Shown here piece after piece: positions 2,920-39,633 of a DNA stretch of 64,000 nt (the stretch's first letter is position 1; each line of letters starts with the position of its first letter). The notes below the pieces were generated by a model. That model saw nothing but the letters and a program-made list of their open reading frames with translations. It was not told where the DNA came from and made no database searches. The translations under genes were made by a program, and so were the position numbers. Source of the stretch: Isurus oxyrinchus (taxonomy: Eukaryota); NCBI GenBank assembly GCA_026770705.1, contig JANJGN010000008.1, forward strand, positions 18,724,001 through 18,788,000, given 5' to 3'.

Positions 2920-3130
2920 TGGATCTCAGCCTAAATGCCCACGATTCTGCTGATGTCTAAATCCTGAGCTGGAAATGGAGAGGAAGCTCGCCTGTCCTGT
3001 AATTTCACAAGAGACAACGTCAATTACTTTATGTAATGTAATAACTGAAAACAGCAGCTTGTTGGGTATCTCTGCACCAGGAGCTTTGCTGCTTACTCTC
3101 TGGGCCACTTTAACACTCTTTTCCCAAAAG
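2920..3130 (+). pseudogene. Promoter/first exon of the Ig-receptor gene (paralog 1)
   Basis: Homologous to 47310-47516 and 60130-60335. GAGGAAG (Ets core), AACGTCA, hydrophobic frame ITENSSLLGISAPGALLLTLWATLTL, donor AAG|GTAGG at 3130/3131. Downstream intron also aligns (3860-3925 with 47925-47985; 4415-4560 with 47992-48130). Confidence 0.65.
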
Positions 3131-3409
3131 GTAGGTTATCTTACCGCAATCATAATTCTATTTAAATGATTTATCAATATGCCTTTGAATAACAGCAACT
3201 TGCTCCACAATTTTACATCATTTTTGATCTTTGAATTTAGACTGAACAAGGACATCAAGTATTTATTGATAAGGTTTCATCTGCTTTTGCATAAAACTCA
3301 GTGGATTTCTTGCAACACAATGTCTGTCAATTACCATTTTACACTTTTGAAGCTTTCCTGTCTGTTGCTTGATCAATGTAACAGTTTCCTTCTATGTTTT
3401 TGTTATATC

Positions 3410-3830
3410 TAGCTCTAGACTTGACTAAACTAACAGACTCCTGGCTGGTCTTCCACTGTCTTGAGCTCTGTAAGCTTGAGGCCATCGAAAACCTGCTGCT
3501 TGTGTGCTAACATGCAATAATTTCTGTTCACCCATCACCCTTTTGACATACAATCCATTGAGATATCTCCAATCCTTCAATTCTGGCCTCTTGATCATCT
3601 CTGATTTTAATCATTCCATCGCTGGCAGCTCTGAATTCATCTGCCAAGGCTCCAAGCTCTGAAATTCCCTCTATAACCTCTGTAGCTCTCTACCTCTCTT
3701 TTGTAATTGAGGCACTCCTTAACATCAATGAAGCTCTTGGTCATCTGCCCTAATATCTCCTTATGCAATTTGGTGTCATATTTGATGACTTCCCCTGAAT
3801 TGCTTTGAGAGGTTTTAATATTTTCAAGGC
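3410..3830 (+). mobile_element. L2 LINE 3' fragment
   Basis: Degenerate SRLDY.N.LLAGLP-type ORF2 C-terminus and L2-like 3' end. Absent from the paralogous introns. Confidence 0.7.
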
Positions 3831-3949
3831 ACTAGGTACAGAAGGACACATTGTGGTAACAACTCAATTTGGTGTTTCTGGTTTTCCAAGTGACCCTTTG
3901 GTTCCGTTTGAGGTTTTCATTGTCGAAAAAAAACATGTTCTATTTATTT

Positions 3950-4167
3950 AACTGAAAATGCTGGAAAAACTCAGCAGGTCTGACAGCATCTGTGGAGAGA
4001 GAAACAGAGTTAACGTTTTAAGTCCATATGCCTCTTCTTCGGAGCCTTACGGACTCGAAACGCTAACTCTGTTTCTCTCTCCATAGTTGCTGTCAGACCT
4101 GCTGAGTTTTTCCAGCATTTTCTGTTTTTATTTCAGATTTCCAGCATCCTCAGTATTTTGGCTTTTA
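3950..4167. mobile_element. Two head-to-head Penelope terminal-repeat fragments forming an inverted repeat
   Basis: GAAAATGCTGGAAAAACTCAGCAGGTCTGACAGCA ... TGCTGTCAGACCTGCTGAGTTTTTCCAGCATTTTC; homologous to 2600-2730. Confidence 0.8.
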
Positions 4168-4239
4168 TTCTATTTATTTCATGCCTTCTAAAATAATAAT
4201 AAATTGCAAGATGCTTTCTGGAATGTTATGAAGCGAAGT

Positions 4240-4412
4240 TTGTTTCCAAGCCACTAAAGGAGCTATCAGAGCAGATGACCAAATCCTGATCGAAGAGATG
4301 GACTTAAAGGAGTAACTTAAATGAGGAAATAGGGAAAGAAATAGAAAGGCAAAGAGATTTAAGGAGGGAATTCCAGACCTTCGGACATCATCGGCTGAAG
4401 GCCTGGCCACCA
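4240..4412 (-). mobile_element. L2-like 3' fragment
   Basis: Similar to the L2 3' end at 18640-18800. Confidence 0.5.
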
Positions 4413-4659
4413 AGGTTCTGCTGGCTATTCAATTCTTTGACTGAGCTGTGAGGCTCAATTTAGTTGAACATATCTCCCAGAGAAATAAGAGCTGCAAAAG
4501 TCACAAAATAAAATATAAGCAAAAAAATTGAACTATTATGGATGAACTTAATTGGCAGATCATAATGTGCGCTTGAATACTGTCCTGACTTTGCATTCAG
4601 CACTTCCTGTACTTGAAAGCTCCTTTCAGTAATGGTGACCATGAAACTGTCATTTTTTT

Positions 4660-5060
4660 AGTTGTAAAAATCCATCTGGTTATTTTATGCCCTTTTGAGA
4701 AGGAAATCTGCCATCCTCACCTGGTCTGGCCTACAGTGACACTAAGAGAGGCATCATCAAACATTAAGATGCACTGCAGCAACTCAGCAAGACTCCTTAG
4801 ACAGCACCTTCCAAACATACGGCCGCGGGCACCTAGAAGGACATGGGCAGCAGATACATGGGAACACAAATATAGCCGTTCTTTCACTGTTGCTGGATCA
4901 AAATCCTAGAGCTCTCTCCCTAACAGTACTGTGGGTGTACATTCATCACATGGGCAACAGCAGTACAAGAAGGTAGTTCACCATGGCCTTCTCAACGGCA
5001 ATTAGGGATGGGCAATAAGTGCTGGCCTTGCCATCGATACCCACGACCTATGAATGAGTA
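4660..5060 (+). mobile_element. HE1-like SINE core joined to a HER1/CR1 LINE 3' end
   Basis: GAAGGAAATCTGCCATCCTCACCTGGTCTGGCCTACA core; tail CAATTAGGGATGGGCAATAAGTGCTGGCC...ATGAATGA. Confidence 0.7.
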
Positions 5061-5222
5061 TATTTTGGAAATACTCAGCCAATCTGGCAGATGTGGAAAA
5101 GAAACAGGTAACATTTCAAATCCATGAACAAGAAAATGAGAGAGATTTAACTGGTATTAAACAAGTACAGTGGCAGGTGTTACAAATATGGCATTTTTAA
5201 GATTGTTATGTTTTGGGATTAT

Positions 5223-6604
5223 GGGCAGAATTGTCCCAGATTTGCACTAATTATGGGGATAAAGGATGTGTTACCTCCCGGCTGCAATGGCGGTTTTTCA
5301 CGCCGCATTGTCTGCTTCCTGCCTCATTAATTATACAGCCACAGGAAACATGCCGTCTCGCTGGCGGGCAGCCTCTGAATCGCCCTCTAAGCCATTACCT
5401 CACCATTTCCCCCACTTCAAGTGCCATATCTAAACTGCAGCTGCACACACAGTTCTCAATGCTTGCAGCCCAGGACTGCCCCAGTAAAGCTGTGAAGATC
5501 AAGAAGAGTTTGGTGACCCATCACTGGAATGCCTTTTGAAGGCCCACCGTGATGTCCTCCACCTCCACTTTGGCCAAAGGAGGTCCATCAATCTCACCAC
5601 TCCAGCTTGGGAGGTGTTGACAGTGGTGGTCAGTGCCAATGCTGCACAGAAGAGGTTGGCCATCCAATGCAGAAAGAGGATGAATAATCTCATCTGTGCC
5701 GCCAGAGTATGGCAACCATCTCATCACTCTAAACTCAGGCACTCACAAGGCCATCATACATTCACTAGCATCTTACTCACTGCCAGTTCAAGGGACATCA
5801 CAACTCACTCTCTCACACACACCCCCACATCTCCATCTGGCCTCATCTCCTCTGGAGGCTGCCTCTTCAGGCCTCAACATCTTGAGGCCACTTGCATGGA
5901 TCAACATGTGCCCCCACAACACACCCTGGGAAACCTACTTACCCCAGTCCAGCTCTCATCCTGCAGCATCTTCGCTTACCCGAGGCCTCCTCTCCCGCTT
6001 CCCCAAACAAGCCCCAGTCATGCAGCCTGCAGTTTATTTTTATTTGTACATGGGATGTGGGCAACACTGGCCGGGCCAGCATTTATTACCCATCCCTAGC
6101 TACCCTTGTTCAGAGGGCATTTAAAAGTCAACCGCATTGTTGTGGGTCTGGAGTCACATGTAGGCCAGACCAGGTAAGGATGGCAGATTTCCTTCCCTAA
6201 AGGACGTTGAAAAGTCACTCCCGTAAAGACCTGTCTGTGAAACCTCCTAAAAATGATGTGGTGCATCCTGGGAACCCTGGCGCTGATGACCGTGAGTGCT
6301 GCCTGAAGCGCGGTAGGCAACCAAACTTCAAAGTCCCGAGTGAAACAAGTCAGCGTGTAATCACGTCGACATGCCCAGATGATCCAGCATGGGGGATGAT
6401 TCCGGCTGGCAGGGATTATAATTACATCCAGATGTATTAAAATAACATCCCTGATGTCTGGCAGTGCGAAACACAGTCTGCCATTGACAGCTGATCGCAA
6501 ATTGGTTTCACGACGTTATGAAGCTGATTTTTGACCTTCCTGCCATATTGTTTACTCACGTCTGCCATGATGCACGACGCCAACGTGGACAGGAAATTCC
6601 AGAC
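5223..6604 (+). mobile_element. PIF/Harbinger-type DNA transposon remnant with a Myb/SANT fragment
   Basis: Degenerate TIRs GGGCAGAATTGTCC / GGAAATTCCAGAC and a 3-bp TAT duplication (5220-22, 6605-07). ORF 5536 reads PAWEVLTVVVSANAAQKRLAIQCRKRMNNL (Myb/SANT-like). Confidence 0.75.
6035..6210 (-). mobile_element. HE1-like SINE (5'-truncated) nested in the Harbinger remnant
   Basis: HER1-type tail plus the GTAGGCCAGACCAGGTAAGGATGGCAGATTTCCTTCC core. Confidence 0.75.
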
Positions 6605-7813: not shown

Positions 7814-7910
7814 ACTTGTATAAAATTCACCAGTTTGTACAACTATGTATAAGTGAACATTATGGTGAAGTATTTTGCAACAGTAATATTGTCCATTCTT
7901 CCTATAGTAG
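7814..7910 (+). CDS. Candidate leader (signal peptide) exon of the Ig receptor
   Basis: Acceptor CCATAG|; strong Kozak AACATTATGG (ATG at 7862); 49 coding nt MVKYFATVILSILPIV+G; phase-1 donor G|GTAAAT joins in frame to D1 (G-NANYVYF). Confidence 0.5.
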
Positions 7911-8117: not shown

Positions 8118-11100
8118 AAGTTCCCAGTTCCCATGTGTCTGCTGCCCTTGTCCTTCTAATTGGTAATGGTCATGGGTTTGGAAGGTACTGTCAAAGGAGC
8201 CTTGGTGAATTCCTGCATCTTGTAGATGGTACACACTGCTGCAACTATGCATCAGTGGTGCAGGGAGTAAATGTTTGTGGATGGGGTGCCAATCGAGCGG
8301 GCTGCTTTTTCCTGATTGGGTCAAGCTTCTTGAGTGTTGTGGGAGCTGCATTCATCCAGGCAAGTGGTGAGTTTTTCATCACACTCCTTAGGTTGTGCCT
8401 TGTAGATGGTGGACAGGCCTCTGGGGAGTTAGGAGGTGAGTTACTTGTCACAGGATTCCTAGCCCCCAGCCTACTCTTGTAGCCACAGTATTTATATAAC
8501 TAGTCCAGTTCAGTTTCTGGCCAATGGTAAGACCCAGGGTGTTGATCGTTTGGGTAAAGTCAATGAACATTAGGGGGCAAAGGTTGGATTCTCTCTTGTT
8601 GGAGATGGTCATTACCTGACACTTGTGTGGTGTGAATGTTACTTGCCATTTGTCAGCCCAAGCCTGGATATTGTCCAGGTCTTGTTGAATTTGGACATGG
8701 ACTGCTCCAGTATCTGAGGATTCATGAAAGGTGTTGAACATTGTGCAAATATCAGTGAACATCCCCACAGGTCACTATCCTGAGGAACATCTGCAGTGAT
8801 GCCCCGGAGCTGAGATGACTGACTTCCAACAGCCTCCAACAATGACAACCACCTTCCTTTGTGCCAGGTATGAATCCAGCCAGCGGCCAGTTTCCCCTCT
8901 GATTCCCATTGACTCCAATTTTGCTAGGGCTCCTTGATGCCACGTCAAATGCGGCTTTGATATCAAGGAAAGTCACTCTCACCTCATCTCAGGAGTTCAG
9001 CTCTTTTGTCCATGTTTGAACCAAAGCTGTAATGAGGTCAGGAGCTGAGTGGCCCTGGCGGAACCCAAACTGAGCGTCAATGAACTGGTTATTGCGAAGG
9101 AAGCCTTGGAGGAGTAAAGAAAGTGTAGCAGAGGTGGGAGATTCTTCGAAAAGTAATTAAGGGAATGAAGGTCTGGCATGAAAAAACACTGGTGGGCAAG
9201 ATGAAGGAAAATCCCAGAGCACTTTATAAATGTATTAAGAACAAGAAGTTAACTGGGGAAAGAGTCGGGCCCATTAGGGACCTAAGTGGCAATCTGTGTG
9301 TGGAGCCAGAGGAGGTGGTGAAGTTTTGAATTATTACTTTTCATCTGTGTTCACTATGGAGAAGGATGATGTTGGTGTAGAAATCAGGAAGGGGGACTGT
9401 GATATACTTAAATTAGCATTGAAAGGGAGGAGGTATTAACAATTTTAGCAGGCTTAAAAGTGGATAAATTCACAGGCCCAGATTAGATGTATCCCAGAGT
9501 CGTATGTAAGGCAAGGGAGTGGATTTCAGGGGCTCCGACACTAATTTTCAAATCCTCTCTGGCCACAGGAGAGGTGCCAGAGGACTGGAGGACAGTGAAT
9601 GTGCTACCATTACTCAAGAAGGGTAGTCAGGATAAACCAGGTAATTACAGGCCAGTGAGTCTAACAACAGTGGTAGGGAAATATGGAAAAAGTTCTGAGG
9701 GACTGGAGTAATTTCCACTCAGAGCGACAGGGATTAATCCGGGATAGTCAGCATGGCTTTGTCAGGGGGGAGTTCATTTCTAACAAATTTGATTGAATTT
9801 TTCGAGGAGGTGACTAGTTGTGTAGATGAGGGTAATGCAGCTATTGTATTCTACATGGACTTCAGTAAGGCTTTTGAAAAGGTCCCGCATGGGAGAATGG
9901 TCAAGAAGGTAGGAGCCTGTGGGATCCAGGGCAATTTGGCAAATTGGATCCAAAATTAGTTTAGTGGCAGGAGGCAGAGGGTGATGGTCAAAGGTTTATT
10001 TTTGTGATTGGAAGCCTGTTACGAGTGGTTTACTACAGGGATTAGTGCTGGGACCCTTGCTGTTTGTAGTTAATGTTAATGATTTAGATGTGAATAGAGA
10101 AAGCATGGTCAGTAAATTCGCAGATGAAGCGAAAATTGGTGGTGTGGTAAATAGGAAGGAGGAAAGCCTTAGATGACAGGACGATATGGATGGGCTGGTA
10201 AGATGGGCTGAGCAATGGCAAATGGAATTTAATCCTGAGAAATGTGAGGTGATGCATTTTGAGAGGACTAACATGGCAAGGGAATACACAATGAATGCTA
10301 GGATCCTGTGAAGCACAGAGGAGCAGAGGGACCTTGGTAGACATAATCCCTGAAGGTAACAGCACAGGTAGATAAGATGGTTAAGAAAGCATATGGGATA
10401 CTTGCCTTTATTAGCCGAGGCATAAAATATAAGAGCTGAAGTTATGTTGGAGCTGCATAAAATCCTAGTTAGGCCACAGCTGGAGTACTGTGTGCAGTTC
10501 AGATCACCACATTATAGAAAGTGTGTGATTGCACTGGAGAGTGTGCAGAGGAGATTCACCAGGATGTTGCCTGCGACAGAGAGTTTCAGCTATGAAGAGA
10601 GACAGGATAGGCTAGGGTTGTTACCCTTAGAGCAGAGAAGGCAGAGACAGGACCTGTTAGAGGTATACATAATTATGAGGAGTATAAATAAGGTAGATAG
10701 AAATAAATTTTTCCCCTTAGTGGAGGTGTCAATAATCAGGGAGCATATGTTTAAGGTAAGGGGCAGAAGGTTTAGAGGGGATCTTTTTCACCCAGAGGGT
10801 GGTTGGAATCTGGAACACACTGCAGAGGCAAGAACCCTCACAACATTTAAGAAGTATTTAGATGAACACTTGAAATGCCAGAGCAAACAGGATTACGGGC
10901 CAAGTGCTGGGAAATGGGATCAGAATAGATAGGTGCTTGATGGCTGGCACGGACACGATGGGCTGAAGGGCCTGTTTCTGAGCTGTATAACTCTATGTCT
11001 CCATGACTCAAGTGCCACTTGATAGCACTGTTGATGACCCCTTCCATTACTTTACTGATGAACAAGAGTAGACTGACGGGGTGGTAATTGGTTGGGTTCG

Positions 11101-12252: not shown

Positions 12253-12918
12253 GAAATGCAAATTATGTTTACTTTTTGCATGAGGGAGATGATATTTCAT
12301 TAAAAGGATCAGACAATCCTGGATAAAAATAAAAAAAACTGCGGATGCTAGAAATCCAAAACAAAAACAGAAACAGAAATACCTGGAAAAACTCAGCAGG
12401 TCTGGCATCATCGGCGAAGAAGACCACAGTTGACGTTTCGAGTCCTCATGACCCTTCAACAGAACTAAGTAAAAATCGGTGACTAAGTAAAAATTGTCAC
12501 CCCTCCCCTTTAAAGCAACTTATATTTCACCCCTTTCCTATTTTTACTTAGTTCTGTTGAGGGGTCATGAGGACTCGAAACGTCAACTTTGCTCTTCTCC
12601 GCCGATGCTGCCAGACCTGCTGAGTTTTTCCAGGTATTTCTGTTTCAGACAATCCTGGAGATGGTCCTGTTGCCTGGAAATGGATACCACACTCAGGGCT
12701 AGAAATCCAACCGCTGGTTACTTTATACAAAACGTGACTGGGCTGGAGGCTTGCAGAATGCAGTGAATTCTTAGAGACAGCAATTTGTTTAATAAATTTA
12801 ATAGATTGGTACCAATCTGAAAATTAGAAATCCCACATTTAAACTGGCAGGATTCATTCATCTTGATTCAAACCCAGCCTCAAAATCCTCAAATGGTATG
12901 AAATATTTGGGATCAAAG
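12253..12918 (+). pseudogene. Ig domain 1 exon (V-like, lacking the canonical B-strand Cys), disrupted
   Basis: Acceptor TTTCTAACAG|. With the insertion removed it reads GNANYVYFLHEGDDISLKGSDNPGDGPVAWKWIPHSGLEIQPLVTLYKT*, then NLKIRNPTFKLAG in another frame, then KWYEIFGIK+G|GTGAGT. AWKWIPH parallels D3 AWSWKPRH. Confidence 0.75.
12324..12644. mobile_element. Inverted Penelope-terminus insertion in the D1 exon with a 15-bp TSD
   Basis: TCAGACAATCCTGGA at 12309-12323 and 12645-12659; internal inverted copies of the 2590-2730 repeat family. Confidence 0.9.
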
Positions 12919-15817: not shown

Positions 15818-16041
15818 NNNNNNNNNNNNNNNNNNNNNNNNNNNNNNNNNNNNNNNNNNNNNNNNNNNNNNNNNNNNNNNNNNNNNNNNNNNNNNNNNNN
15901 NNNNNNNNNNNNNNNNNNNNNNNNNNNNNNNNNNNNNNNNNNNNNNNNNNNNNNNNNNNNNNNNNNNNNNNNNNNNNNNNNNNNNNNNNNNNNNNNNNNN
16001 NNNNNNNNNNNNNNNNNNNNNNNNNNNNNNNNNNNNNNNNN
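15818..16041. other. Assembly gap
   Basis: Run of N. Confidence 1.
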
Positions 16042-16464
16042 TTGAAATGTTCTGTGCTCTGTGTACATTGAGAATAAATTAAAAATAGGATTTTTTCCCC
16101 ATGATTTATACTGTGACAATATTTTTCAACCACGCCCTCTTCTGGTGAGGGTCCATGACATATCCATTGTGGTGTGAGTTTCCCCAGATACCATCCAAAC
16201 ACTGAAACTTTGATCTGACTTCAGGTTTTCCAGCAGGTTCAGAGGTCAAGGTCAGCAGTTTTGCTCTGCCTCACTTACACTGATGGAGCAGAACCGAGAG
16301 TCCATGTTATTCTACTGTTCAAATGCACGTGTCAGTCATCTGGTCTAACTCTTCAATGCAGCAAGGAACAAGTGCTGATAATCGGTAGAGGCACAGTTGG
16401 AACATAATCATGGGATTTTACCTGCCACTATTGACAATAAATCTAATTGATCTGTTTTTCACAG

Positions 16465-16734
16465 TTGAGACAAGTCCACAGTGGTCTGTGGTGGGCAATG
16501 ATGTTACTCTCAGCTGCACAATCTCCAAACTCTCAGATACAGTCAGTCTTCACTGGAAACAGAGAGACTCATCTCAGCAGAACAAGAGGAAAACTGATCA
16601 GGTCCAACTAAATGACACAGTCTATCTGATAGTCAAACATGTTGCAGTAGAGGATGGGAAATTTTATGAGTGTGAAGTGAAGGAAAATGGATTCATCATT
16701 CTCACAGGAAAGGCACGTTTTTCAGTGGATAAAA
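16465..16734 (+). pseudogene. Ig domain 2 exon (C2-type), open frame
   Basis: TTTTTCACAG| VETSPQWSVVGNDVTLSCTISKLSDTVSLHWKQ...YLIVKHVAVEDGKFYECEVKENG...FSVDK+A|GTAAGC; phase 1/1; C-W-DxGxYxC pattern. Confidence 0.92.
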
Positions 16735-17779
16735 GTAAGCACAGTTTTCAGACAGTTGATATTAAACAGCTACTAATATATATTTTTATTCATTCAAGGG
16801 ATGTGGGTGTCACTGGCTAGGCCAGTATTTATTGTCCACTCCTAATTGCTCTTGAGAAGGTGGGGGTAAGCTGCCAATATCAAATGGTTATTTATAATGC
16901 GATGAAAGTATAAGAATTATCATAGTATTTTTCGGGTTTATTATGAAGTAGATTCATGGGAGTAAGTATAGTTGGGTGTGTGTGATTTAATTACATTTGG
17001 AGTCAAATAGACTAAGTTTGAAATCATCAAAAGAAGCTAGGTGCTTGACATGCTCATGAGTAAACATGGATGCTGGCTTAGCATGTAAGATGTGAAGGGA
17101 ATTTGCATTTTTTTAGATGAATGAAGAGATTTGGATATCAAAGGGATCTTAGTCTGTTTACAACTTGCCAGATAAGCAAGGCTAAGGGAAGGTATTTATT
17201 TTTCCCAAACGGTTCTCACAACGTATTTATTGGCAACATGAAATTTTTTTATTATGAGGAAGATTCCGTTTCAAAGACAAAGGAAACAATAGAATTTACA
17301 TATTAAAAAGAGAGAAACATGTATGAAGGAGAATGAAAGGCTGTGTGTCAAAAGGCCATGTAGAATCTAACAGGAGTGTGTGAAATAGCCTTAATGAAGT
17401 GTCCAGCATTTGTGCATAAGGCTGCTATATAATGAAACTAAAGTTTGGGAAATGTCATTTGGAATTCTACTGTCCAATGTATTGTGTTAACTTGCTGAGT
17501 TTGTTTTAAATCTAAAATATATTTTGAGCAATTGCTTTAAAGGGGGTATAATTGGGAGTCAGGTTAATTAAGAATTTTAGGAGCTATTAAAAGAGTAAGT
17601 AATTTTAGTTTTATGTATGTGTTTGAAATCTTTTATATTTTGATAACAAATATGTTATTTTTATTAGGATTAACATACTATGATTAAAACTAAAATGTTT
17701 TCAGAAACAGCATTTTGAAGAAAGAAAAAAAAAATCCTCCACAAAGTGGAAATCAGGATTGTTGCAAATTTTCAGGGAG

Positions 17780-19340
17780 GTGACTGTAAAGCTGGACAAA
17801 GTTCAGCAAGAGGTGGAGGGGTTCAGGGAGGGAGTCCCATAGGTTTAGGCTGTTTTACCACCAATGGTGGAATAGAGGGAGGGAACAGAGAGATGACGAC
17901 AGGGAATGTGAAAGGAGATCATCCTGTAGGAAATTCTAGAGGTACATTGGGGTGAGGCGGTGGAGAGATTTGTCAACAATGATGAGGATTTTAGATTTGA
18001 TGTGTTGATGGACAGGGAACCAGTTTTTGTCAGTGAGGATGGGAGAGGAGGATTTAGTGTGGAATAGAATGTAGACAGATCTTTTGACCACATGAAATAG
18101 CAAGCCATCTTTCTGGGATGTAAAACTTGCTGCCAATTTATCATTACCCATTTACACCATCACATAACACCAAATTATGCTCATAGTTCTTTAAGAAAAG
18201 ATCGCAATTGCTTCCTGGGCAATAATTAAAACATTTCAATCTTGTCAGCTGCCATGTTGTTTTTCAGCAGCAATTAAAGCATTTCTAGGCACACTGACAG
18301 AACTGAAGGCTTTAACAGAAACAATGAAAAAGAAATAAGATTGTGCACTTCTTGCACAGGAATAATGTTTGTGCAAAAATATTATATATCAGAGGAGATA
18401 AATGTTCGGTGTAAAAGGAAAAAACCCACAGGTTGCCTCCAACTCAAACCACAGTAACCTTGCTTGGTGGGTTATGTTAATATGGCCCAGGACCATGGAG
18501 CTGACATGGCCATTGTGGTCAGGTGAGTACTGGAGTCAGGTAGTTTGTCTTTGAATAATTGTTCCAGGTAATAACAACAATGTAACTTATAATTATATTG
18601 TGCCTTTGGCATAATAAAATGTCAGGAATGTTATGAAACAAGATTTGATGCCGTGCCATTCACAATGATATTAAGGCCGTAAGCTTGGTCCAAAGAGGTG
18701 GGTTTTAAGAGGCAGCTTAAAGAAGGAAGGAGAGGTAGAGAGGCCAAGAAGTTGAGGTACAAATTCCAGGACTGAGGGCCTAGTTGGCTGAAGGGACAGC
18801 ACCAATAATGGAGCAATTAAAATCAAGGGGCCAGAATTAGATGAGTGCAGATATTTTTCAGGATTGTGTGGCTAGAGCAGATTACAAAGATAGGGAGCAG
18901 CCAGACTATGGAGGGATTTGAAAACAGGGATGAGAATTTGATAACTGAGGCATTGCTTGACTGGGAGCCAATGTAGGTCAGTGAGCACAGGAATGATGGT
19001 TGAATAGGACTTGGTATGAGTAAGAACACAGGCAGTGGAGTTTTTAATGACCTCAGCTGTATGGAGGATGGACTGTGTGAGACCAGCTAGGAGTGTGTTG
19101 GAATAGCCAAGTCTAGAGGGAACAAAAGCCTGGATAGGGTTCAGCAGCAGAGGAGCTGAGGCAGGGCTGAAGTCGGGTAATGTTACAGTGGTGGAAATTG
19201 GCAGTCTTAGTCGTTGCACAACCACATGGTCGGAGCTCACCTAATGGTCAAATATGACACCAAACAGGGAACAATCTGCCTCAGCCTCACACAGTTGCTC
19301 GGGAGAGGGATGGAGTTGGTAACTACGGAATGGAGTTTTA
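17780..19340 (-). mobile_element. L2 LINE fragments (~17780-18090 internal; ~18570-19340 3' end)
   Basis: ORF 18872-19240: IQAFVPSRLGYSNTLLAGL...IIPVLTDLHWLPV...FKSLHSLAAPYL. Confidence 0.8.
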
Positions 19341-19967
19341 GTGGAGGAAAAAATAGCTTTGATTTTCTCAGTGCTTTAGGGGAACAACTTTATGCTCATC
19401 CAGACTGGATGTCATTTGAGCAGAATATGTACACTGGTTGTGCTGGTACTTACAATGGTTTTAATAATATCAAAGAGAGAGTTGAGAGTTCAGTTGATCA
19501 AATCAGTTGCTGAAGAAAGATTGTGGTGAACAGAGGGACAAAGGTTAGAAGGTTAGGATTTTGAAAGGACCATATTGGACATGAAAGGAATGCCTGAAGG
19601 AAACCATCCTTGGACCTATGTGAAATTCAACATTTAGAGAAAAGTAAAATTCAACATGTCCTGCAGCTGCCACCAGCACCACTCAATATTGCTGACCAAA
19701 ATTCAGAATATTGGGCCTGTGATGGCTTCATATTAAAAATCAAAAAGATTTAATTTTTAGAATTTCCTGTTGCCTTATGGGTATTATATTCACCCAAGTT
19801 TATAATGTTTAAACAGTTCATATCTTTGACAAAATCATGATCAAATGATATTATGATGATCTGAACTTTGATGATCATCTAATTGTGGCAGCAAATTACT
19901 TTTAATTTTCTCTGTATCTCAACAACAATAAAATTCTAACACAATGTTCTCTGTCGCTCTATTACAG

Positions 19968-20317
19968 AGTTATATGGTGAGAGTTACATTCTTTATCGAT
20001 CAGGCACAGCTCACAGTGAACTCTATCTGATTTGCTATGCTTATTACAATAGGATTTTTCACATTTACTCCATTGCTGCATGGAGCTGGAAGCCACGTCA
20101 TCCTCCAAATCAGGAGAAAGAAATAGCATCTGCATCGAAACATCAGCCCATCAATGTAAACAGGACTGACTTTGGGAATCGTCTTGTCCCCAGACAAGTT
20201 TTAATGGTGTGAATTTCAGCGTGAGGATTGTCCCCGTGCTGTTTGAAGATGCTGGAGTTTACACATGTTCTCTGGATAGAAAAACATGGGTGACCATTAC
20301 ACTAATCACAGTTAAAG
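19968..20317 (+). pseudogene. Ig domain 3 exon (V-type), one frameshift
   Basis: ATTACAG| KLYGESYILYRSGTAHSELYLICYAYYNRIFHIYSIAAWSWKPRH...TDFGNRLVP, frameshift at ~20190, then SFNGVNFSVRIVPVLFEDAGVYTCSLDRKTWVTITLITVK+G|GTAGG. Confidence 0.9.
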
Positions 20318-20395
20318 GTAGGAGACAGAATGTTGCTGCTGTTTTCAATGATCAAGTCAATGTTTAAAATCTAAATGATTTTCTTGTTTACACTG

Positions 20396-20660
20396 TGACA
20401 ACTGAACCATCTGATGCAGTGACTGAGGGAGACAACCTTACCCTGAACTGCTCCGTCTCTGATGTCACTGAAACAATGAGACTTGTTTGGATCAATAGTG
20501 ATGGCAAAACTGTTGTAGAGAAAACATTGAAGGAAGAGAAACAGGAACAGGGTTATTCTGATTATTCAGAATGCCGACCGAGACAGAAGGAACTGGACAT
20601 GTGTTTTGTTTCATCAAAACACACCCAAAGTTTTAATTCCATATTATCTGAAGGTTAACA
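20396..20660 (+). pseudogene. Ig domain 4 exon (C2-type, WxC motif), broken acceptor and a frameshift
   Basis: Acceptor reads TG at 20394-95. VTTEPSDAVTEGDNLTLNCSVSDVTETMRLVWINSDGKTVVEKTL, frameshift at ~20551, then VILIIQNADRDRRNWTCVLFHQNTPKVLIPYYLKVN+A|GTAAGA. Confidence 0.9.
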
Positions 20661-21638
20661 GTAAGAGCCTCAGATTATAAACTTTGCAACCCTAATCCCA
20701 AGTTTTTAACTCCTTATTGAAGGTTAACAGTCAGTCTTTCAGATTTGTTCTTTGTAACCTCCATCGCAAGTTCTTGTCACTTACCGGTCTGTTATAACTT
20801 TTCACTTTCATGTGTTTTTGCATTCCACATTGTTAAGATTAGACCATAGGTGTTGCATTGAAGGATCAGCTGGTTGACCCAAGGACGTTCCTTCATCCCT
20901 TGTCTGTATTTAATCCGATAATAACAAGGTTGCATCCATGGAGGTTCTGCCAGGACATGAAAAGTGAAAGTATATCTCCGGGTTTCCACCTTGAGGTGAG
21001 AATTGGGACTTGGTTCATTTCCTGGACATCGCTATCCTGCCTCCTGAGTAGCCATGTCCTCCCACTGTACATTCCCCTGTCAGAGTCAGGGGCAGGTTGG
21101 AGTCGGGATCATGGCCTCCCGAAGCAGATGATTGCCGAAGCAGCCAAGCAGCTTCTGTTCAATGGGACATTGACCCAGCTCTGTAAATGAGGTTGAGCCC
21201 TTCTAATCTTCACCCCCTCTACCACTGCAACCATCCCTCATTCCCAATGCCCCATATTGCCACCATATTTCCTCATCATCCCTATACCCCTCCATATACC
21301 CATCCATATCCCCTATGCCAACCCTCACCTCATGCACACTCAGCCACACACCTCACACCTTCATCTCTCCCATGCCAAATTACTCACACCCTCACCCTTT
21401 CACCACATCATGCACACTCACCCACCTCCCTCATCCATTTACCCCCATGTTCCTCATCCACCCTTTACTTCCACATGACCACCCACCCAGTATCCACTAT
21501 ATACTGAACTCTTGAGCTCTTTAATAATATTGGGAAGTCTTTGCAATGTTCATGAAAGTGCCATGATAAACATTTAAGAAACTACTTTTAAAAACCCTCT
21601 GAAGTGGTCATAAAACTGTTAATATAAGTAAACTCACA

Positions 21639-28400: not shown

Positions 28401-29201
28401 CTACACTTGGTCAGACACAAATAAACCCTTCTAGGCAACACTCCCTTCAAAATGTTTAACTATAAAAAATCCAGTATTATTACTCAAGGCAAACTGCCGT
28501 AGGCTCAATAGAGGCATACCGTGTTACCTTGCAACTCTCTCCCACTCTACTGTAGAATCCAAACTTCAGAATAAACTGCCTGCTGCATTCCAAGACTTTC
28601 CTGGCTTGACTCGATGGCTGGTTGAAATGACACTCCTCCTAATCCAAAGCTAACGGCTTCCAACTCAGCTCCAACTGCTATCAACAACTCAAACAGCTAC
28701 ATCTTCAGCTGCAGCTCAACAGCTATCCCAAGCATTCCACAGTAACTCTAAAATACCTTTTTTCCTCGGTTTATCTCAGGTTGCATTGTGTTCACACCTC
28801 TTTAAAACTCAAATCCTTCTAAATATAAGTTCTTCCATATTTCCATCTTGTCTTTAATTTTGGGTCAGCAAAGTATAATATCCCTGCCCCTTTCTATTTA
28901 CTCGTGGAACTCCTGCAAGATGTAAACTTGTTTCTTTCTCACCTCTGACTCCTCTTTGATATTCAAACAAGCTCTCAACTTATCTAAAATTGCAAATGGT
29001 AGGTCTAACGCAACACCTCTATCCTGTCCATGTCTTAAATCCCCCAGACAACCGGTCTCANNNNNNNNNNNNNNNNNNNNNNNNNNNNNNNNNNNNNNNN
29101 NNNNNNNNNNNNNNNNNNNNNNNNNNNNNNNNNNNNNNNNNNNNNNNNNNNNNNNNNNNNNNNNNNNNNNNNNNNNNNNNNNNNNNNNNNNNNNNNACAC
29201 A
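22440..29201 (-). mobile_element. Gmr1-like Gypsy element (SCAN-like gag; PRO-INT-RT-RH order)
   Basis: LTRs ~28140-29200 and ~22440-23159. PBS TGGGGGCTCATCTGGGAT (28118-28135, tRNA-Pro-like); PPT at 23160. ELVPEAYQWKFR, FRDTGTS; INT 25096-26182 lies upstream of RT (YIDD, 23866-24189). Confidence 0.88.
29061..29196. other. Assembly gap
   Basis: Run of N inside an LTR. Confidence 1.
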
Positions 29202-29467: not shown

Positions 29468-30995
29468 CTTTTTTATTCATTCATGGGATGTGGGCTTCGC
29501 TGGCTGGCACAGCATTTATTGCCCATCCCTAATTGCCCTTGAGAAGGTGGTGGTGAGCTACCTTCTTGAACCGCTGCAATCCATGTGGTGTAGGTACATC
29601 CACATTTCCACAGTGCTGTTAGGGAGGGAGTTCCGGGATTTTGAGCCAGCAATAGTGAAGGAATGGTGATATATTTCCATTTCAAGATTGTGAGTGACTT
29701 GGAGGGGAACTTCCAGTTGGTGGTATTCCCGTCTATTTGCTGCCCTTGTTCTTCTAGATGGTAGTGGTTGTGAGTTTGAAGGTGCTGTCAAAGGAGCCTT
29801 GGTGAATTCCTGCAGTGCATCTTGTAGATGGTACACACTGCTGCTACTGTGCGTCGGTGGTGGAGGGAGTGAATGTTTGTGGATGAGATGCCAATCAAGC
29901 GGGCTGCTTTGTCCTGGATGGTGTCAAGCTTCTTGAGTGTTGTGGATGCTACACTCATGAAGGCAAGTGGAGAGTATTATATCACACTCCTGTCTTGTGT
30001 CTTGTAGATGGTGGACAGGCTTTGGGGAGTCAGGAGGTGAGTTACACATCGCAGGATTCCTAGCTCTGACTTGCTTTTGTAACCATATTATTTATATGGC
30101 TAGTCCAGTTCAGTTTCTGGTTAATGGTAACTCCTAGGATGTTGATAGTTGGAGATTCAGTGATGGTAATGCCATTAAACATCAGGGGGCAATGATTGGG
30201 TTCTCTCTTGTTGGAGATGGTCATTGCCTGACACTTTGTGTGGCATGATCGTTACTTGTCACTTGTCAACCCAAGCCTGGATATTGTCCAGGTCTTGCTG
30301 CATTTGGACATGGACTGCTTCAGTATCTGAGGAGTCAGAAATGGTCCTGAACATTGTGCAATGATCAGTGAACATCCCCACTACTGACCTCATAGTGGAA
30401 GGTCATTGATGAAGCAGCTGAAGATGTTTGGGCCTAGGACACTACCCTGAGGAACTCCTGCAGTGATTCCGTGGAGTTGAGATGACTGACCTCCAACAAC
30501 CACAACCATCTTCCTTTGTGCTGGGCATGACTCCAACCAGTGGAGAGTTTTCCTCCTGATCCCCATTGACTTCAGTTTTGCTAAGAATCCTTGATGCCAC
30601 ACTCAGTCAAATGTGGCCTTGATGTCAAGGGCAGTCACTCTCACCTCACCTCAGGAAATTAGCTCTTTTGTCCATGTTGGAACCCGGGCTGTAGTGATGT
30701 CAGGAGCTGAGTGGCCCTGGCGGAACCCAAACTTGGCGTCAGTGAGTCGGTTATTGCTAAGCAAGTGCCGCTTGATAGCACTGTCGATGACCTCTTCCAT
30801 TACTTTACCGATGGTCAAGAGTAGGTTGATGGGGCGGTAATTGGCCAGGTTGGATTTGTCCTGCATCTTGTGTACAGGACATACCTGGGCAATTTTCCAC
30901 ATAGCCGGGTAGATGCCAGTGATGGAACAGCTTGGCTAGGGGTGCAGCAAGCTCTGGAGCACAAGCCTTCAGTACGATTGCTGGAATAGTGGTAA
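29468..30995 (-). mobile_element. HER1/CR1 LINE (5'-truncated) inserted in the Gypsy integrase
   Basis: GVPQGSVLGPNIFSCFINDL and NYRPINLL motifs; HER1 3' tail at ~29470; CATGT at both flanks (29463-67, 30996-31000). Confidence 0.9.
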
Positions 30996-35307: not shown

Positions 35308-35844
35308 GGGCAGAATTTTGCCATCGGTGAGCAGGGGACCGACCTGTATAATGATGCGGGATAATGTTGGGCAGAACCCCCGATCTCACCCCACCCCATT
35401 TAAATTTTCAGGAAGGCAGGAGCACAGCAAAATCAGCTGCAGGCCCGCCGACCTGTCAATGGCCACTTAAGGCCAATGACAGGATCGATTAAGCAATTAA
35501 AGGACCTGCCCGTCCAACATTAAGGTTGACGCGCAGGCCAGGAGCCCCGGCGGGGAGTAGAGTAAACATGAAACCTCATCCAGCGGCGGGATGAGATTTC
35601 ATGCAGGGTTTTAAAAATTGTAATAAAGTTGTTCTGTAAATTATGAACATGTCCCAACTCAGGTGACATTGTCACATGAGGGGGACATGTTAGGGATTTT
35701 TCTTTTCTTTATCTTTAATAAATTTAAAAGTCAAAGCGAGTTACCTGAGGCACATAGCGGGGCCCACTTCGCTGGTGGGGATTGGCTCCGCGCCTGCTGG
35801 AGGTCGCTTTGGGCCCGCCCGTCTGACAGGTAGAACATTCTGCC
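35308..35844. mobile_element. Harbinger-like MITE
   Basis: TIRs GGGCAGAATTTTGCC / GGTAGAACATTCTGCC; TGG at both flanks. Confidence 0.65.
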
Positions 35845-36498
35845 TGGGAGTCTGCCTGTGCAGGAAATTGTCAATTTACATCATGCAGTGTGATAATATT
35901 TTAGTATTTTAGATTTTGAAATAAAATAATAAATTAAATGTGCAATAGTTAAGTGTTATTTTTAAAATGGATCCTTCAAAAGCATGTATGGTAGCAAAGT
36001 TGGATATGAATAATTTCATTAAAATGGCACTTATCAAAATAGGTGTTTTTTTTGAAATAATGACTTGTTTCAGACCTGTGGCTGTTTTGCACCTTGATAG
36101 TTAATGTCTTCCAGGGCAGCACAGCCAAGATTGGGAATTTGCTGCCCAAGGAATCTCAGGTGTGAATCTGTACTCTACCAGTCTGGTCAAGACAAAACTT
36201 TTACATCGGTTTATTCTAACGTAGATAATGAAAATCTCCCTTTTCATTCACTCAGAGCTGCTCACTTTAGTTCAAAACCATTCCACCCACAACAATCTGT
36301 GAAAATATGTGCAGATATATAAACTGTGACTTAAAAAGAAACACTAGGATAATTTTTCACAAAGATCCGGTGCTCTGGCTCTAATGTTTAAAGCAGAATA
36401 TTTTCACTTTCCGCATCTTTCATAGAATAAAAGGCTGGAATTTTTAAATTTTAATTGCAATGGAGAGACAGACCAAATAATAACTTTGTCATTCACAG

Positions 36499-36608
36499 TG
36501 AGAGCGAGAACCCTTCCAGACATTTGGATCATCACAGTTTCCGGTTACTTGTTGGTTAAACTGAGCTTTGCAGTTGGACTAATTTGCTGCTTGAAGAAGA
36601 TGAACAGC
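36499..36608 (+). pseudogene. Transmembrane exon of the Ig receptor
   Basis: ATTCACAG| (M)RARTLPDIWIITVSGYLLVKLSFAVGLICCLKKMNS |GTAAGA; phase-1 start matches D4; hydrophobic span with an internal K, then CC and KK stop-transfer. Confidence 0.85.
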
Positions 36609-37761
36609 GTAAGAATTATTTAAAGTTTTCCAATAAGTCAGGAATTAGTGTTGAACTGTCACTTGACATTGAGAAAAGTGATGCCATTGAACAGATATTA
36701 TGTGGTCACAAACTGAATTTTAAAATACTATTTAAATGTTGTACATTTCCAGGATATAAAAGAATCATCAAGTGGTACAGATAAACAGAACAATTGCTCC
36801 AAATTGTGTGAAATCTTAGAGCATTGGCATTTTTCCTGATTTAAATGCCAGAAAGTTCCTTGTTCCCACTTTCCACAAGACTCAAGGAAGAAATTGGGAA
36901 CAACCTAGATCACCATCCCTGTTTATCAATGAATGGACAATGCTCAAACTCGGAGTCAATCTTTTAATATTATTCATTGACTATCACCAATGTTCCTCTT
37001 TGGAAGTTATTATTTTGGAAACTGTTAGGAAGCAATACTTTAACAGTTAAAGCATGAGCTGTAAAAATGACGATGAACTGAAAATACTACTATATTTTGT
37101 GACAATTTGAGTATATTTTTTGTGTGTGCTGTTATTCTTGTTATTGTGGGCTGGTGTCACTAGAGAGCTTCAGTAGGGTTGGGTTTCAGAATCAGTTTGT
37201 CACTTTGCAAACCACTTCCTCTGTGCCAGGTTTGGCTTACCTATTTCCTCATGGTGAAATCTCAATCAATTCAAAATGAAAGATTCTATTTTGGAGAGCC
37301 CTGACCAGTTTGTGTTCAAGGGAGGAATGTTTCAAGGCTGTTTGCTTTTCAGTGAAGCGAGATTTGTAGAAAAGGAACCAGTTGGGTAAAAGATTCAACA
37401 ATGTTGTAACCACTGGGAAGATTGAATTTACATCAAAGGTGTGAGGTAACCTGTATTGTTTAAGATGTTTACATAGAATTATATGGTAGCTACAGCACAG
37501 AAGCAGGCCATTCAGCCCAGCTGGCCTACGTTGGGAATCATGCACCATATGAGCTCTTCCCACTCTTCTGACACATCCTTCTTTTCATGTCTCTTTCCTG
37601 TAAACTCTCGCTTCCCCTGAAATGAATCATCAATGTAATGCTTGCCTCAGCTACACCAGCTGTTTATGAGTTCCAGCAAGGAAAGGATCAGGGAAATCCC
37701 TGATGCTCAGAACTGATTATAAATGAATGAAATAAAAACAGAAAATGAACATTGCTCACAT

Positions 37762-38130
37762 TACAGAATCACAGAATCACACAGTGCAGAAGAGGCCCTT
37801 CGGCCCATCGAGTCGGCACTGACATGTGAGAAACACTTGACCTACCTATCTTATCCCATTTACCAGAACTTGGCCCATAGCCTTGAATGTTATGACATGC
37901 CAAGTGCTCATCCAGGTACTTTTTAAAGGATGTGAGGCAACCCGCCTCCACCACCCTCCCAGGCAGCGCATTCCAGACAATCACCACCCTCTGGGTAAAA
38001 ATGTTTTTCTGCACATCCCCCCTAAACCTCCTGCCCCTCATCTTGAACTTGTGGCCCTCATGACAGACCCTTCAAATAAGGGGGGCAGCTGCTCCCCACT
38101 ATCCACCCTGTCCATGCCCCTCATAATCTT
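37762..38130 (-). mobile_element. CR1 LINE 3' end
   Basis: FTQRVVIVWNALPGRVVEA...FKKYLDEHL; (TGATTCTG)n tail. Confidence 0.9.
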
Positions 38131-38650
38131 AGAAGTCTAAAAATAGGAACCTATTATTCTAGTGTTAATATTTTCAAATAGTTTACAATCACATCTATTC
38201 CTCTTGGAAATTAGTAACGTCAAATTGCCAGAAATTAATCAATTTGAACAGTTGTTGGTTAAAATGTGACAAATAAAAATGACAACAGGTTGAACAGTGA
38301 TACTGAATATTGTGAAAATGAATGATTCCGTTAAACTTCACAGCAAATCACAGATCAGGGAGGTAAAGAAAGAGATTTGACCAGCAGCTCTGGGTGGAGA
38401 ACATTGTTCAGTCAGAGGCAGAGTCGTAAGTTCAAGGAGGTTACTATATAGGTGAGGTTGGTCAGCCACAAGGAGATCCTGTTGAGATATGGTCACATTG
38501 TGGCCAAGAGCTTTGGCCTCTGTGGTGTGAATCTACTTCACATTCAGATTTTCACAGCTGTAAAAACCTTCCACAAAACATTCTATCAGTAACTGGAACG
38601 AGTTTATAATTCCAGGTTTGTTCCTTCCAATTTCTTCCATTGAAGCCTTT

Positions 38651-39360
38651 GAGTGGAATTTTGCAATAGCCTGCCATTCCCAATGTTGGGGTGAAATCCA
38701 GGTCAGGAATTTGGATGTGGTTGTGGTGGGGCTTCGGATGCAATTTTCCTAGAGGCGGCCAATTTACAAGCTGCCTGCAGGTGCCTTGTCCAATTAGGAA
38801 CAGCAGCCAGGTTCCTGTGTTCCAATCAGTGTGGGCTGTGGATAGGGAATTCAGCCATTCTGATAATGTGGGCAGTGCCAGGGCAAGAAGAGGAGTGGCA
38901 GTAGCACCCTCCAATGGGATAAAAGAGTCATTGCAGCAAGGTAAGGATTATTGGAGACATCGGTCCCTATTCAGTGAATGTGAGGGTATGCCCTTGCTAT
39001 CCTGGGTCAGCCCCACTTTGTGAATTACTGCTGACAAATAATCTGAAACCCTCAACTGAGTCACAGGTCGGGTCTCCAGCTGCGATGCCAACTCCGATCC
39101 ATTGTCAGACCCCTGAACCAGTGAGAGGCCCATCCATTCCAGGGACAATCTCTTTCCCCATGCAGTTAACTGGTTCATGGCCACACTTCATTGGCACCAT
39201 ACTGCTGCCTGGCAGGTTACCATCAAACCTATTAGCCCACCTCCTGGAAAAACTCATGGAGGCAGGAATGCATTGAGGAGCCAACCCAATCTAGACCTTT
39301 CCTAATTTCCTCCCCACCATGTTCCAAAGCTGCATCTGTAGGTCTGGGAAAACTCAGCCC
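38651..39360. mobile_element. Non-autonomous Harbinger-like element
   Basis: Degenerate TIRs GAGTGGAATTTTGC / GGAAAACTCAGCCC. Confidence 0.5.
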
Positions 39361-39531
39361 TTTACCTGTTGCAGTGATCCCATTAACAATGATTCGGTTT
39401 TGTGTGGGTCAAGTTCTGTTCAGTTGCCCATTCTGTAAAAATGTCTTTATTTGATTTGCACTTCATCCATCACTTAAGCCCAATGTTTGTTCCTGAAGGA
39501 TTTATTTAAATACATTTTTGCCTTTTGTTAG

Positions 39532-39633
39532 ATATCAAACAATAGGAATCCACCCAAGGCGACTGGAAATAAAGAAACTGTCCAATTACAGACCCTGAAC
39601 TCTGACACTGATTTGAGATCATGGAATGAATGA
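39532..39633 (+). pseudogene. Probable cytoplasmic-tail exon
   Basis: Strong acceptor TTTTTGCCTTTTGTTAG|; phase-0 frame ISNNRNPPKATGNKETVQLQTLNSDTDLRSWNE*; the last codons overlap a CR1-tail-like fragment. Confidence 0.5.

What the first reader, a model, noticed from the sequence alone, without database searches (positions are those of the whole stretch)
2920..39633. Hidden CD4/LAG-3-like four-domain receptor with activating-receptor hallmarks
Seen: phase-1 exons reconstruct V-like D1, C2 D2, V D3 (DAGVYTC), C2 D4 (NWTC), then a TM exon and a short tail. Established: a V-C2-V-C2 layout with WxC in C2 domains characterises the CD4/LAG-3 family; teleost DICPs also have WxC C2 domains. Inference: there is no CxC/CxH Lck motif and no FxxL/ITIM in the predicted tail, so this is not CD4 or LAG-3 itself. 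It is more likely a member of an expanded, possibly undescribed chondrichthyan CD4-related receptor family.
Basis: partly seen in the sequence, partly recalled or inferred. Interest (0 to 1): 0.85.

Follow-up and report, generated by a model that had tools for sequence, protein, structure and literature searches.

The report
Decayed shark CD4/LAG-3-like activating receptor gene
The window holds the exons of a four-domain, antibody-like surface receptor of the "activating" type, but three of its four domain exons are broken, so it is most likely a dead copy of a large, unnamed fish receptor family whose outer part most resembles CD4 and LAG-3.

Summary

They do not add up to a reading frame.
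- D1 carries a 336-base repeat insertion with a 15-base target duplication, one stop and three frameshifts.
- D3 is one base short.
- D4 has lost its acceptor AG and five bases.
- D2, the membrane exon and the tail are intact.

Both assembly gaps lie in introns.

The best explanation is a pseudogene of the activating type (about 0.8). It belongs to a real multigene family found in sharks, rays, chimaera, coelacanth and ray-finned fishes. All members are annotated "uncharacterized", and I found no paper on the family. It has lysine-membrane forms and ITIM-tailed forms.

LAG-3 and CD4 are the nearest solved relatives by profile and fold search, though by modest margins. The family is neither CD4 nor LAG-3: it lacks both tail motifs and D2 has YxC, not WxC.

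This scan already reported the same family on neighbouring DNA (s1-869870, s1-866804). Expression could not be tested, because no RNA run holds this stretch.

The parts
2975..3130 (+). Candidate leader exon (unverified)
   Evidence: It has an ATG, a 52-codon open frame and the donor AAG|GTAGGT. It ends in phase 0, while D1 needs phase 1. It matches no family N-terminus. Copies about 70% identical lie at 47286-47551 and 60105-60370.
12253..12323 (+). D1 relic, 5' part (V-like, no cysteines)
   Evidence: The acceptor is ...tctttctaacAG|GA, phase 1. It reads NANYVYFLHEGDDISLKGSDNPG, 70% identical to P0005 residues 31-53.
12324..12659 (+). Repeat insertion inside the D1 exon (includes the second copy of the target-site duplication)
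   Evidence: The 15-bp direct duplication TCAGACAATCCTGGA lies at 12309-12323 and 12645-12659. The insert has inverted-repeat arms (81% self-complementary). Other copies lie at 2547-2721, 3950-4159 and 47685-47780.
12660..12918 (+). D1 relic, 3' part, with a stop and three frameshifts
   Evidence: DNPGDGPVAWKWIPHSGLEIQPLVTLYKT*LG is in one frame, NLKIRNPTFKLAG in the next, SFILIQTQPQ in the third, and KILKWYEIFGIK back in the first. The donor is AAAG|GTGAGT, phase 1.
16465..16734 (+). D2 exon, intact (C2/I-type, YxC)
   Evidence: It is 270 nt, phase 1-1, with acceptor cacAG and donor A|GTAAGC. Pfam Ig_3 E=8.7e-8. It is 71% identical to P0005 D2. HMMER finds 44 proteins at E<=1e-10. Contigs from four runs agree, with no indels.
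19968..20317 (+). D3 relic (V-type, DAGVYTC), one frameshift
   Evidence: It is 350 nt. The upstream two-thirds are in one frame (LYGESYILYRSG...NRTDFGNRLVP) and the rest in another (FNGVNFSVRIVPVLFEDAGVYTC...ITLITVK). Seven nt stand where relatives have 12. Reading on in the upstream frame meets a stop at 20209-20211.
20396..20660 (+). D4 relic (C2-type, NWTC), acceptor lost and frameshift
   Evidence: It is 265 nt. The bases before the exon are TG, not AG. The frame changes between ...EKTLKEEKQEQ and LIIQNADRDRRNWTC. A multi-copy contig of the related organism B has 5 extra nt (T after 20552, ACAG after 20557), the number needed to restore the frame. The donor is ACA|GTAAGA, phase 1.
36499..36608 (+). 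Transmembrane exon, intact, lysine in mid-helix
   Evidence: The acceptor is cacAG and the donor AGC|GTAAGA. It enters in phase 1 and leaves in phase 0. It is 69% identical to P0005 residues 435-473.
39532..39633 (+). Cytoplasmic tail exon with stop codon, intact
   Evidence: The acceptor is ttgttAG, phase 0. It has 33 codons plus TGA. It matches the tails of P0005, P0036 and P0137, including the C-terminal ...QTLNSD.DLR..NE.
15818..16041 (.). Assembly gap in the D1-D2 intron
   Evidence: N run. It lies between exon relics. It was not filled and its continuity was not tested.
29061..29196 (.). Assembly gap in the D4-TM intron
   Evidence: N run. It lies between exons. It was not filled and its continuity was not tested.

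Best explanation
This is an unprocessed pseudogene of the activating (lysine-membrane, short-tail) type. It belongs to a multigene family of paired activating and inhibitory Ig-superfamily receptors that lies in a cluster on this chromosome.

Shown: the locus keeps the family's layout of (leader)-D1-D2-D3-D4-TM-tail, with one exon per domain and phase-1 borders. D1 was hit by a repeat insertion and has a stop and three frameshifts. D3 and D4 each have a frameshift, and D4 has lost its acceptor. No full-length receptor can be made from it.

Inferred for intact relatives:
- They are type I membrane proteins built of two rigid V-C2 rods, as in CD4 and LAG-3.
- The lysine forms would signal through an ITAM adaptor with an acidic membrane residue (DAP12- or FcR-gamma-like).
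- The ITIM/ITSM forms would recruit SH2 phosphatases.
- The ligand is unknown.
For: Exon relics:
- They are collinear with P0005 at 51-71% identity.
- D1 lesions: a 15-bp target-site duplication around a repeat that has other copies in the window, a TGA stop, and conserved motifs read in three different frames.
- D3 is 350 nt and D4 is 265 nt, where phase 1-1 exons must be multiples of 3.
- The D4 acceptor reads TG.
- A contig of a related organism carries the 5 nt missing from D4.

Family:
- 131 HMMER hits, 44 at E<=1e-10.
- More than 100 elasmobranch proteins, with 4-Ig and 8-Ig architectures.
- Lysine-membrane forms and ITIM-tailed forms both occur.
- Word depth over D2-D4 is 4-20 times that of the flanking introns in four DNA runs, which points to close paralogues.

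Scan notes report an intact ITIM-tailed 8-Ig relative 2.2 kb upstream of the window. That is an unchecked lead.
Against: - D2, the TM exon and the tail exon are fully intact, with good splice sites. That is somewhat unexpected in an old pseudogene.
- The lesions in D1, D3 and D4 were not confirmed by independent reads. The single read-laying run covered only 16042-20760 and showed no contig across 20552-20557 in the source organism.
- An intact D1 exon could be hidden if gap 15818-16041 is longer than estimated.
- Because all domain exons are phase 1, transcripts that skip the bad exons would stay in frame.
- No RNA data were available either way.
Confidence: 0.8

Rival explanations
1. It is a working activating receptor gene. 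On this reading the apparent frameshifts, stop and lost acceptor are assembly or consensus errors.
For: D2, TM and tail are intact and conserved, and all splice phases fit. The assembly has gaps nearby.
Against: A repeat insertion with a clean 15-bp target-site duplication is not a base-calling error. There are at least seven independent lesions in about 950 nt of D1, D3 and D4. Where it could be checked (16042-16558), independent contigs agree with the window and show no indels within the exons (one T inserted at 16090, in the intron, in organism B).
Confidence: 0.07
2. It is a scaffolding chimera. On this reading the D1 relic, the D2-D4 block and the TM and tail exons come from different family copies, joined across the two gaps, and the true partner exons lie elsewhere.
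For: The two gaps fall exactly between these three blocks. The family has many near-identical paralogues, which makes assembly hard.
Against: Order, strand and phases are exactly those of one gene. The D3 and D4 lesions lie inside one ungapped block, so that block is defective in any case.
Confidence: 0.08
3. It is a decaying gene that still makes a shortened product. On this reading exon skipping, which stays in frame because the exons are phase 1, yields a D2-only or D2-TM lysine-bearing protein.
For: D2, TM and tail are preserved. Relatives with fewer domains are annotated, with architectures 12, 24 and 234.
Against: No verified leader or start codon exists in the right phase. There is no RNA evidence.
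Confidence: 0.05

Closest known systems
LAG-3 (CD223)
   Same: - It has a V-C2-V-C2 ectodomain.
- It is the best-scoring solved protein for both family profiles (E=8e-12 and 1e-13). The family's D3(E-G)-D4 segment aligns to both LAG-3 D1-D2 and D3-D4, including WxC.
- It is the top Foldseek hit for the four-domain model (3.5e-17).
- As in shark LAG-3, D1 has no intron and the tail after the TM exon is a single exon (PMC10768021).
   Different: - There is no (F/Y)xxL(D/E) motif.
- D2 has YxC, not WxC.
- D1 lacks the B-strand cysteine in all members read (a few keep the F-strand one), and has no detectable sequence relative.
- It is a multigene family with lysine-membrane and ITIM forms and 8-Ig versions.
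- The margin over NCAM, titin and CD22 is only 1-3 orders of magnitude.
CD4
   Same: - The two-domain rod has a continuous G-to-A strand.
- The D1-D2 model superposes best on rat CD4 D3-D4 (Z 15.0, 2.7 A, 171 of 177 residues) and on CD4 D1-D2 (Z 13.3) among 48,161 chains.
- CD4 gives the highest TM-scores in both Foldseek searches.
   Different: - There is no Cx(C/H) LCK motif.
- The tail is one exon, not several.
- Sequence similarity is weak (E=1.7e-6 and out of register).
- It is not a single-copy coreceptor gene.
Paired activating/inhibitory IgSF receptor families (KIR, LILR, SIRP, CEACAM, teleost NITR, DICP, LITR)
   Same: - It is a clustered multigene family.
- Members with a basic membrane residue and short tail sit beside members with ITIM/ITSM tails.
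- Pseudogenes are common in such clusters.
   Different: - The domain types and order (V-C2-V-C2 rods, doubled to 8 Ig) differ from those families.
- DICP domains are described with four conserved cysteines in D1 and D2, which this family lacks.
- CEACAM scores lower (CEA 1e-8 with the first profile; CEACAM1 4e-7 with the deeper one; Foldseek ranks 42 and 47).

Membership tests
CD4/LAG-3 family (criteria of Takizawa et al. 2023, PMC10768021) | V-C2-V-C2 ectodomain | tested here: met
   Exon relics D1-D4 are collinear with four-domain relatives. The AlphaFold2 model of P0005 has pLDDT 82.7 and four Ig domains.
CD4/LAG-3 family | WxC motif in strand F of both D2 and D4 | tested here: not met
   D4 has NWTC, and W.C is conserved in most relatives. 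D2 has FYEC in the window and Y.C is invariant in the family. Only half of the motif pair is present.
CD4/LAG-3 family | Rigid V-C2 units with a continuous strand between domains, fold closest to CD4/LAG-3 | tested here: met
   Strands 132-147 and 336-350 run across the domain borders. VIA-align top hit is CD4 D3-D4, Z 15.0. Foldseek top hits are LAG-3, then CD4. These are predicted models, not solved structures.
CD4/LAG-3 family | Specific sequence similarity beyond generic Ig | tested here: inconclusive
   LAG-3 ranks first with two profiles, but NCAM, titin and CD22 are within 1-3 orders of magnitude. The D1-D2-only profile finds nothing specific.
CD4 | Cx(C/H) LCK-binding motif in a tail encoded by several exons | tested here: not met
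   The tail KKMNS/ISNNRNPPKATGNKETVQLQTLNSDTDLRSWNE has no Cys or His, and one exon follows the TM exon.
LAG-3 | (F/Y)xxL(D/E) motif in a single-exon tail | tested here: not met
   The tail is a single exon, but it has no F or Y.
CD4/LAG-3 family | Genomic position beside CD4/LAG-3 and their conserved neighbours | not testable with these tools
DICP (diverse immunoglobulin domain-containing proteins) | D1 and D2 domains with C23, C104 and the DICP-specific cysteines | tested here: not met
   The feature is described in bioRxiv 10.1101/2021.06.11.448072. Family D1 has no conserved cysteine and D2 has only the canonical pair. None of 84 teleost relatives is named DICP. No DICP sequence was available for direct comparison.
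Adaptor-coupled activating IgSF receptor (functional class) | Basic residue in mid-membrane helix, short tail without tyrosine, inhibitory counterparts in the same family | tested here: met
   The window has GYLLVKL. At least 20 relatives have GYLxxK[LV], and many others have IHYASV plus VIYAQI tails. Adaptor binding itself was not tested.
Unprocessed pseudogene | Introns retained plus disabling lesions in coding exons | tested here: met
   There is a repeat insertion with a target-site duplication, a stop, five frame changes and a lost acceptor. These were not confirmed by independent reads for D1.

The most novel reading that the evidence does not exclude
The family to which this dead copy belongs may be a third, ancient branch of the CD4/LAG-3 lineage. 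On this reading it is a clustered multigene set of paired activating (lysine-membrane) and inhibitory (ITIM/ITSM) receptors with 4 or 8 Ig domains. It would be present from chimaeras and sharks to coelacanth and teleosts and absent from tetrapods. It could then show what the MHC class II coreceptors evolved from.
Probability: 0.4. Interest if true: 0.7.

Novelty: new variant of a known kind. Interest (0 to 1): 0.4.

Why it matters
CD4 and LAG-3 are usually treated as a two-member family of single-copy MHC class II binders. A large fish family with the same V-C2-V-C2 rod architecture, the D4 WxC motif, and both "on" and "off" versions would bear on how these coreceptors arose. It would also add a new set of candidate innate receptors in cartilaginous and bony fishes.

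This window adds little to that story. It shows that the cluster holds a lysine-membrane (activating-type) copy next to an inhibitory gene, and that this copy is decayed, as is common in fast-evolving paired-receptor clusters. The intact neighbours already reported by the scan are the better objects for study.

Tried and rejected
- **ORF at 16225-16384.** It lies just upstream of D2, with an AG in front and a GT behind and V-like motifs in a second frame. I first took it for the second half of D1. No family protein matches it, so I rejected it.
- **Leader exon 2975-3130.** It is in the wrong phase and unlike family N-termini. A small internal intron would restore phase 1 but would give a non-hydrophobic peptide. 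Left unverified.
- **Expression.** No RNA run holds the stretch, so splicing could not be tested.
- **Read support.** The one read-laying run covered 16042-20760 only. D1 and both gaps were not checked.
I therefore have no genomic structure or neighbours for intact relatives.
- **D1-D2-only profile against the PDB.** Only nanobody-type framework hits came up.
- **DICP and CEACAM readings.** Neither is supported.
- **Nurse-shark 'obscurin-like' record AGQ17915.1.** No paper text mentioning it was found.
- **Spliced model.** The joined model was never built or searched.
- **Gaps.** They were not filled.
- **Complex prediction** was not used. No adaptor sequence was at hand, and I make no binding claim beyond inference.
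Full report
**What is in the sequence.** The window has two N runs, 15818-16041 and 29061-29196. DAGVYTC is at 20248-20268 and NWTC at 20591-20602, both on the + strand but in different frames. A scan of all six frames finds only one Ig domain that is open from end to end, at 16465-16734. Pfam scores it as Ig_3 (8.7e-8), Ig_2, I-set and C1-set. The pieces at 20170-20364 and 20368-20655 give partial V-set and Ig_3 matches.

**Relatives.** I searched the intact exon, by reference, against 1.84 billion representative proteins.
- There were 131 hits, 44 at E<=1e-10.
- The best are predicted proteins of sharks and rays (Pristiophorus, Heterodontus, Scyliorhinus, Pristis, Mobula, Rhinoraja, Hemitrygon, Narcine, Chiloscyllium, Heptranchias).
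- Others come from the chimaera Callorhinchus, coelacanth, bowfin, eel, a mormyrid and a characiform.
- Nearly all are named "uncharacterized".
- A teleost member finds 84 more in otophysans, salmonids, eels and Umbra, none with a family name.
- A family profile finds more than 100 elasmobranch proteins.
- The commonest architectures are D1-D2-D3-D4 (47 proteins) and a doubled eight-domain form (24 proteins).

**Exon map against a full-length relative.** The 509-aa Pristiophorus protein P0005 reads leader-D1-D2-D3-D4-TM-tail. tblastn places every part of it on the + strand of the window, in order. No further family exons occur elsewhere, apart from a weak D1-like relic at 30334-30429. With splice sites read from the DNA the map is:

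| Part | Coordinates | Length | State |
|---|---|---|---|
| D1 | 12253-12323 plus 12660-12918 | 330 nt | insertion, stop, three frameshifts |
| D2 | 16465-16734 | 270 nt | intact |
| D3 | 19968-20317 | 350 nt | one frameshift |
| D4 | 20396-20660 | 265 nt | acceptor lost, frameshift |
| TM | 36499-36608 | 110 nt | intact |
| Tail | 39532-39633 | 102 nt | intact, ends in TGA |

All domain borders are phase 1 and the TM-tail border is phase 0. The junction residues fit relatives: window ...YYLKVN-M-RARTLPDIW against Pristis ...HFLKTNMRTFPDIW.

**Gaps.** The first gap lies in the D1-D2 intron and the second in the D4-TM intron. No exon is interrupted. If the 224-base estimate holds, the first gap is too short to hide a whole D1 exon of about 330-350 nt.

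**Why this copy is not functional.**
- **D1, insertion.** D1 is split by a 336-base insertion flanked by the 15-bp direct duplication TCAGACAATCCTGGA. The insert has inverted-repeat arms and other copies in the window.
- **D1, other lesions.** Behind the insertion there is a TGA stop (...LVTLYKT*LGW). The strongly conserved motifs NLKIRNPTFKLAG, SFILIQTQPQ and KILKWYEIFGIK lie in three different frames.
- **D3.** It is one base short of a multiple of three. Seven bases stand where relatives have four codons, and the upstream frame runs into a stop.
- **D4.** It is five bases short and its frame changes at about 20551-20557. The polypyrimidine tract is followed by TG instead of AG.
- **Read evidence for D4.** A multi-copy contig of a related organism carries exactly five extra bases at 20552/20557, the number that restores the frame. 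No contig of the source organism spans that spot, so the window's own reading there is unconfirmed.
- **Read evidence for D2.** Over 16042-16558, contigs of four runs agree with the window, with no indels within the exons; the three organism-B contigs carry one inserted T at 16090, in the intron.
- **Copy number.** Word depth over the D2-D4 exons is 4-20 times that of the flanking introns. This points to several close paralogues.
- **Expression.** No RNA run holds the stretch, so expression is untested.

**Leader.** It ends in phase 0 and resembles no family N-terminus. Copies about 70% identical sit in a 12.8-kb tandem duplication at 47.3 and 60.1 kb. They are in phase 1 but lack a start codon. 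I leave the leader unverified.

**What the family is.** Intact members come in two kinds.
- One kind has the window's type of membrane helix with a central lysine (GYLxxK[L/V]; sharks, rays and bowfin) and a short, tyrosine-free tail ending ...LQTLNSDPDL....
- The other has an uncharged helix and a long tail with IHYASV-type and VIYAQI-type ITIM/ITSM motifs.

This is the pattern of paired activating and inhibitory receptors. The adaptor and phosphatase steps are inferred from what is established for such receptors, not shown here.

**Relation to CD4 and LAG-3.**
- **Profiles.** A profile of 11 members scored against all PDB sequences puts LAG-3 in the first three places (8e-12 to 3e-11). The family's D3(E-G)-D4 aligns to both V-C2 units of LAG-3, including WxC. 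CEA and titin follow at 1e-8.
- **Deeper profile.** A 65-member profile keeps LAG-3 first (1e-13), but NCAM (2e-12), titin and CD22 are close and CD4 is at 1.7e-6.
- **D1-D2 alone.** A D1-D2-only profile finds nothing specific.
- **Four-domain model.** AlphaFold2 models are confident (pLDDT 82.7) and show single strands running across the D1/D2 and D3/D4 borders. Foldseek ranks LAG-3 first and four-domain CD4 next, with the best TM-scores.
- **Two-domain model.** An unfiltered structural search of the D1-D2 model over 48,161 chains ranks rat CD4 D3-D4 first (Z 15.0, 2.7 A over 171 of 177 residues) and CD4 D1-D2 fifth (Z 13.3). Other high hits align one domain only.
- **Gene structure.** Takizawa et al. 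2023 (PMC10768021) give WxC in both D2 and D4 as the family motif. They state that shark CD4 and LAG-3 have no intron in D1, and that the LAG-3 tail is a single exon. The window shares the last two features.
- **What is missing.** D2 has YxC. The tail has neither Cx(C/H) nor (F/Y)xxL(D/E).

So the family is CD4/LAG-3-like in build and is probably related. It is neither gene, and the sequence evidence for a specific relationship is moderate.

**Other candidates.** DICPs are described with extra conserved cysteines in D1 and D2, which this family lacks. No DICP sequence was at hand for a direct test. CEACAM scores lower in both kinds of search.

**Novelty and earlier notes.**
- I found no paper on this family in seven full-text searches.
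- A nurse-shark member is in GenBank as "obscurin-like protein" (AGQ17915.1).
- The scan has already reported the same family on neighbouring DNA of this genome: an intact eight-Ig ITIM gene 2.2 kb before this window (s1-869870) and a tandem set 125 kb beyond it (s1-866804).
- I read those notes after my own profile and fold results. They agree with mine.

**Limits.** The spliced model was searched exon by exon only and was never joined.

**Verdict.** It is an activating-type pseudogene (about 0.8) in a cluster of an unnamed CD4/LAG-3-like paired-receptor family.

Noticed in passing
window 30334-30429 (+): A short D1-like relic (VRNGPEHCAMISEHPHY*PHSGRSLMKQLKMF) lies just past the second gap. 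It is 47% identical to the second D1 of Chiloscyllium P0026 and contains a stop. It may be the remnant of a fifth domain, as in the D1-D4-D1-TM form of Heterodontus P0018, or of a former eight-Ig layout.
   Followed up: partly
window 43477-48873 and 56262-61604: A tandem duplication, 92-93% identical, with a period of about 12.8 kb. Each copy carries a leader-like segment (47286-47551, 60105-60370) that is 70% identical to 2900-3165. Their hydrophobic core is in phase 1, but there is no in-frame ATG.
   Followed up: partly
window 16225-16384 (+): A 160-nt open stretch lies 80 nt upstream of D2, with an AG in front and a GT behind. A second frame reads like a V-domain E-F region (SLTLMEQNRESMLFYC). 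No family protein or Pfam model matches it.
   Followed up: partly
window 269-2144 and 9129-10929 (+): Reverse-transcriptase-like open frames of retroelements. The first has a YVDD motif. The second is broken into several frames. They fill much of the presumed first intron.
   Followed up: no
window 12324-12647; also 2547-2721, 3950-4159, 47685-47780, 48962-49050, 61686-61742: A short repeat family with inverted-repeat arms (81% self-complementary in the D1 insert) is scattered through the window. One copy is the insertion that splits D1.
   Followed up: partly
window 16674-17780 and 18570-19360: Intron stretches show word depths of thousands to hundreds of thousands in all four DNA runs. They are high-copy interspersed repeats shared by both organisms.
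   Followed up: no
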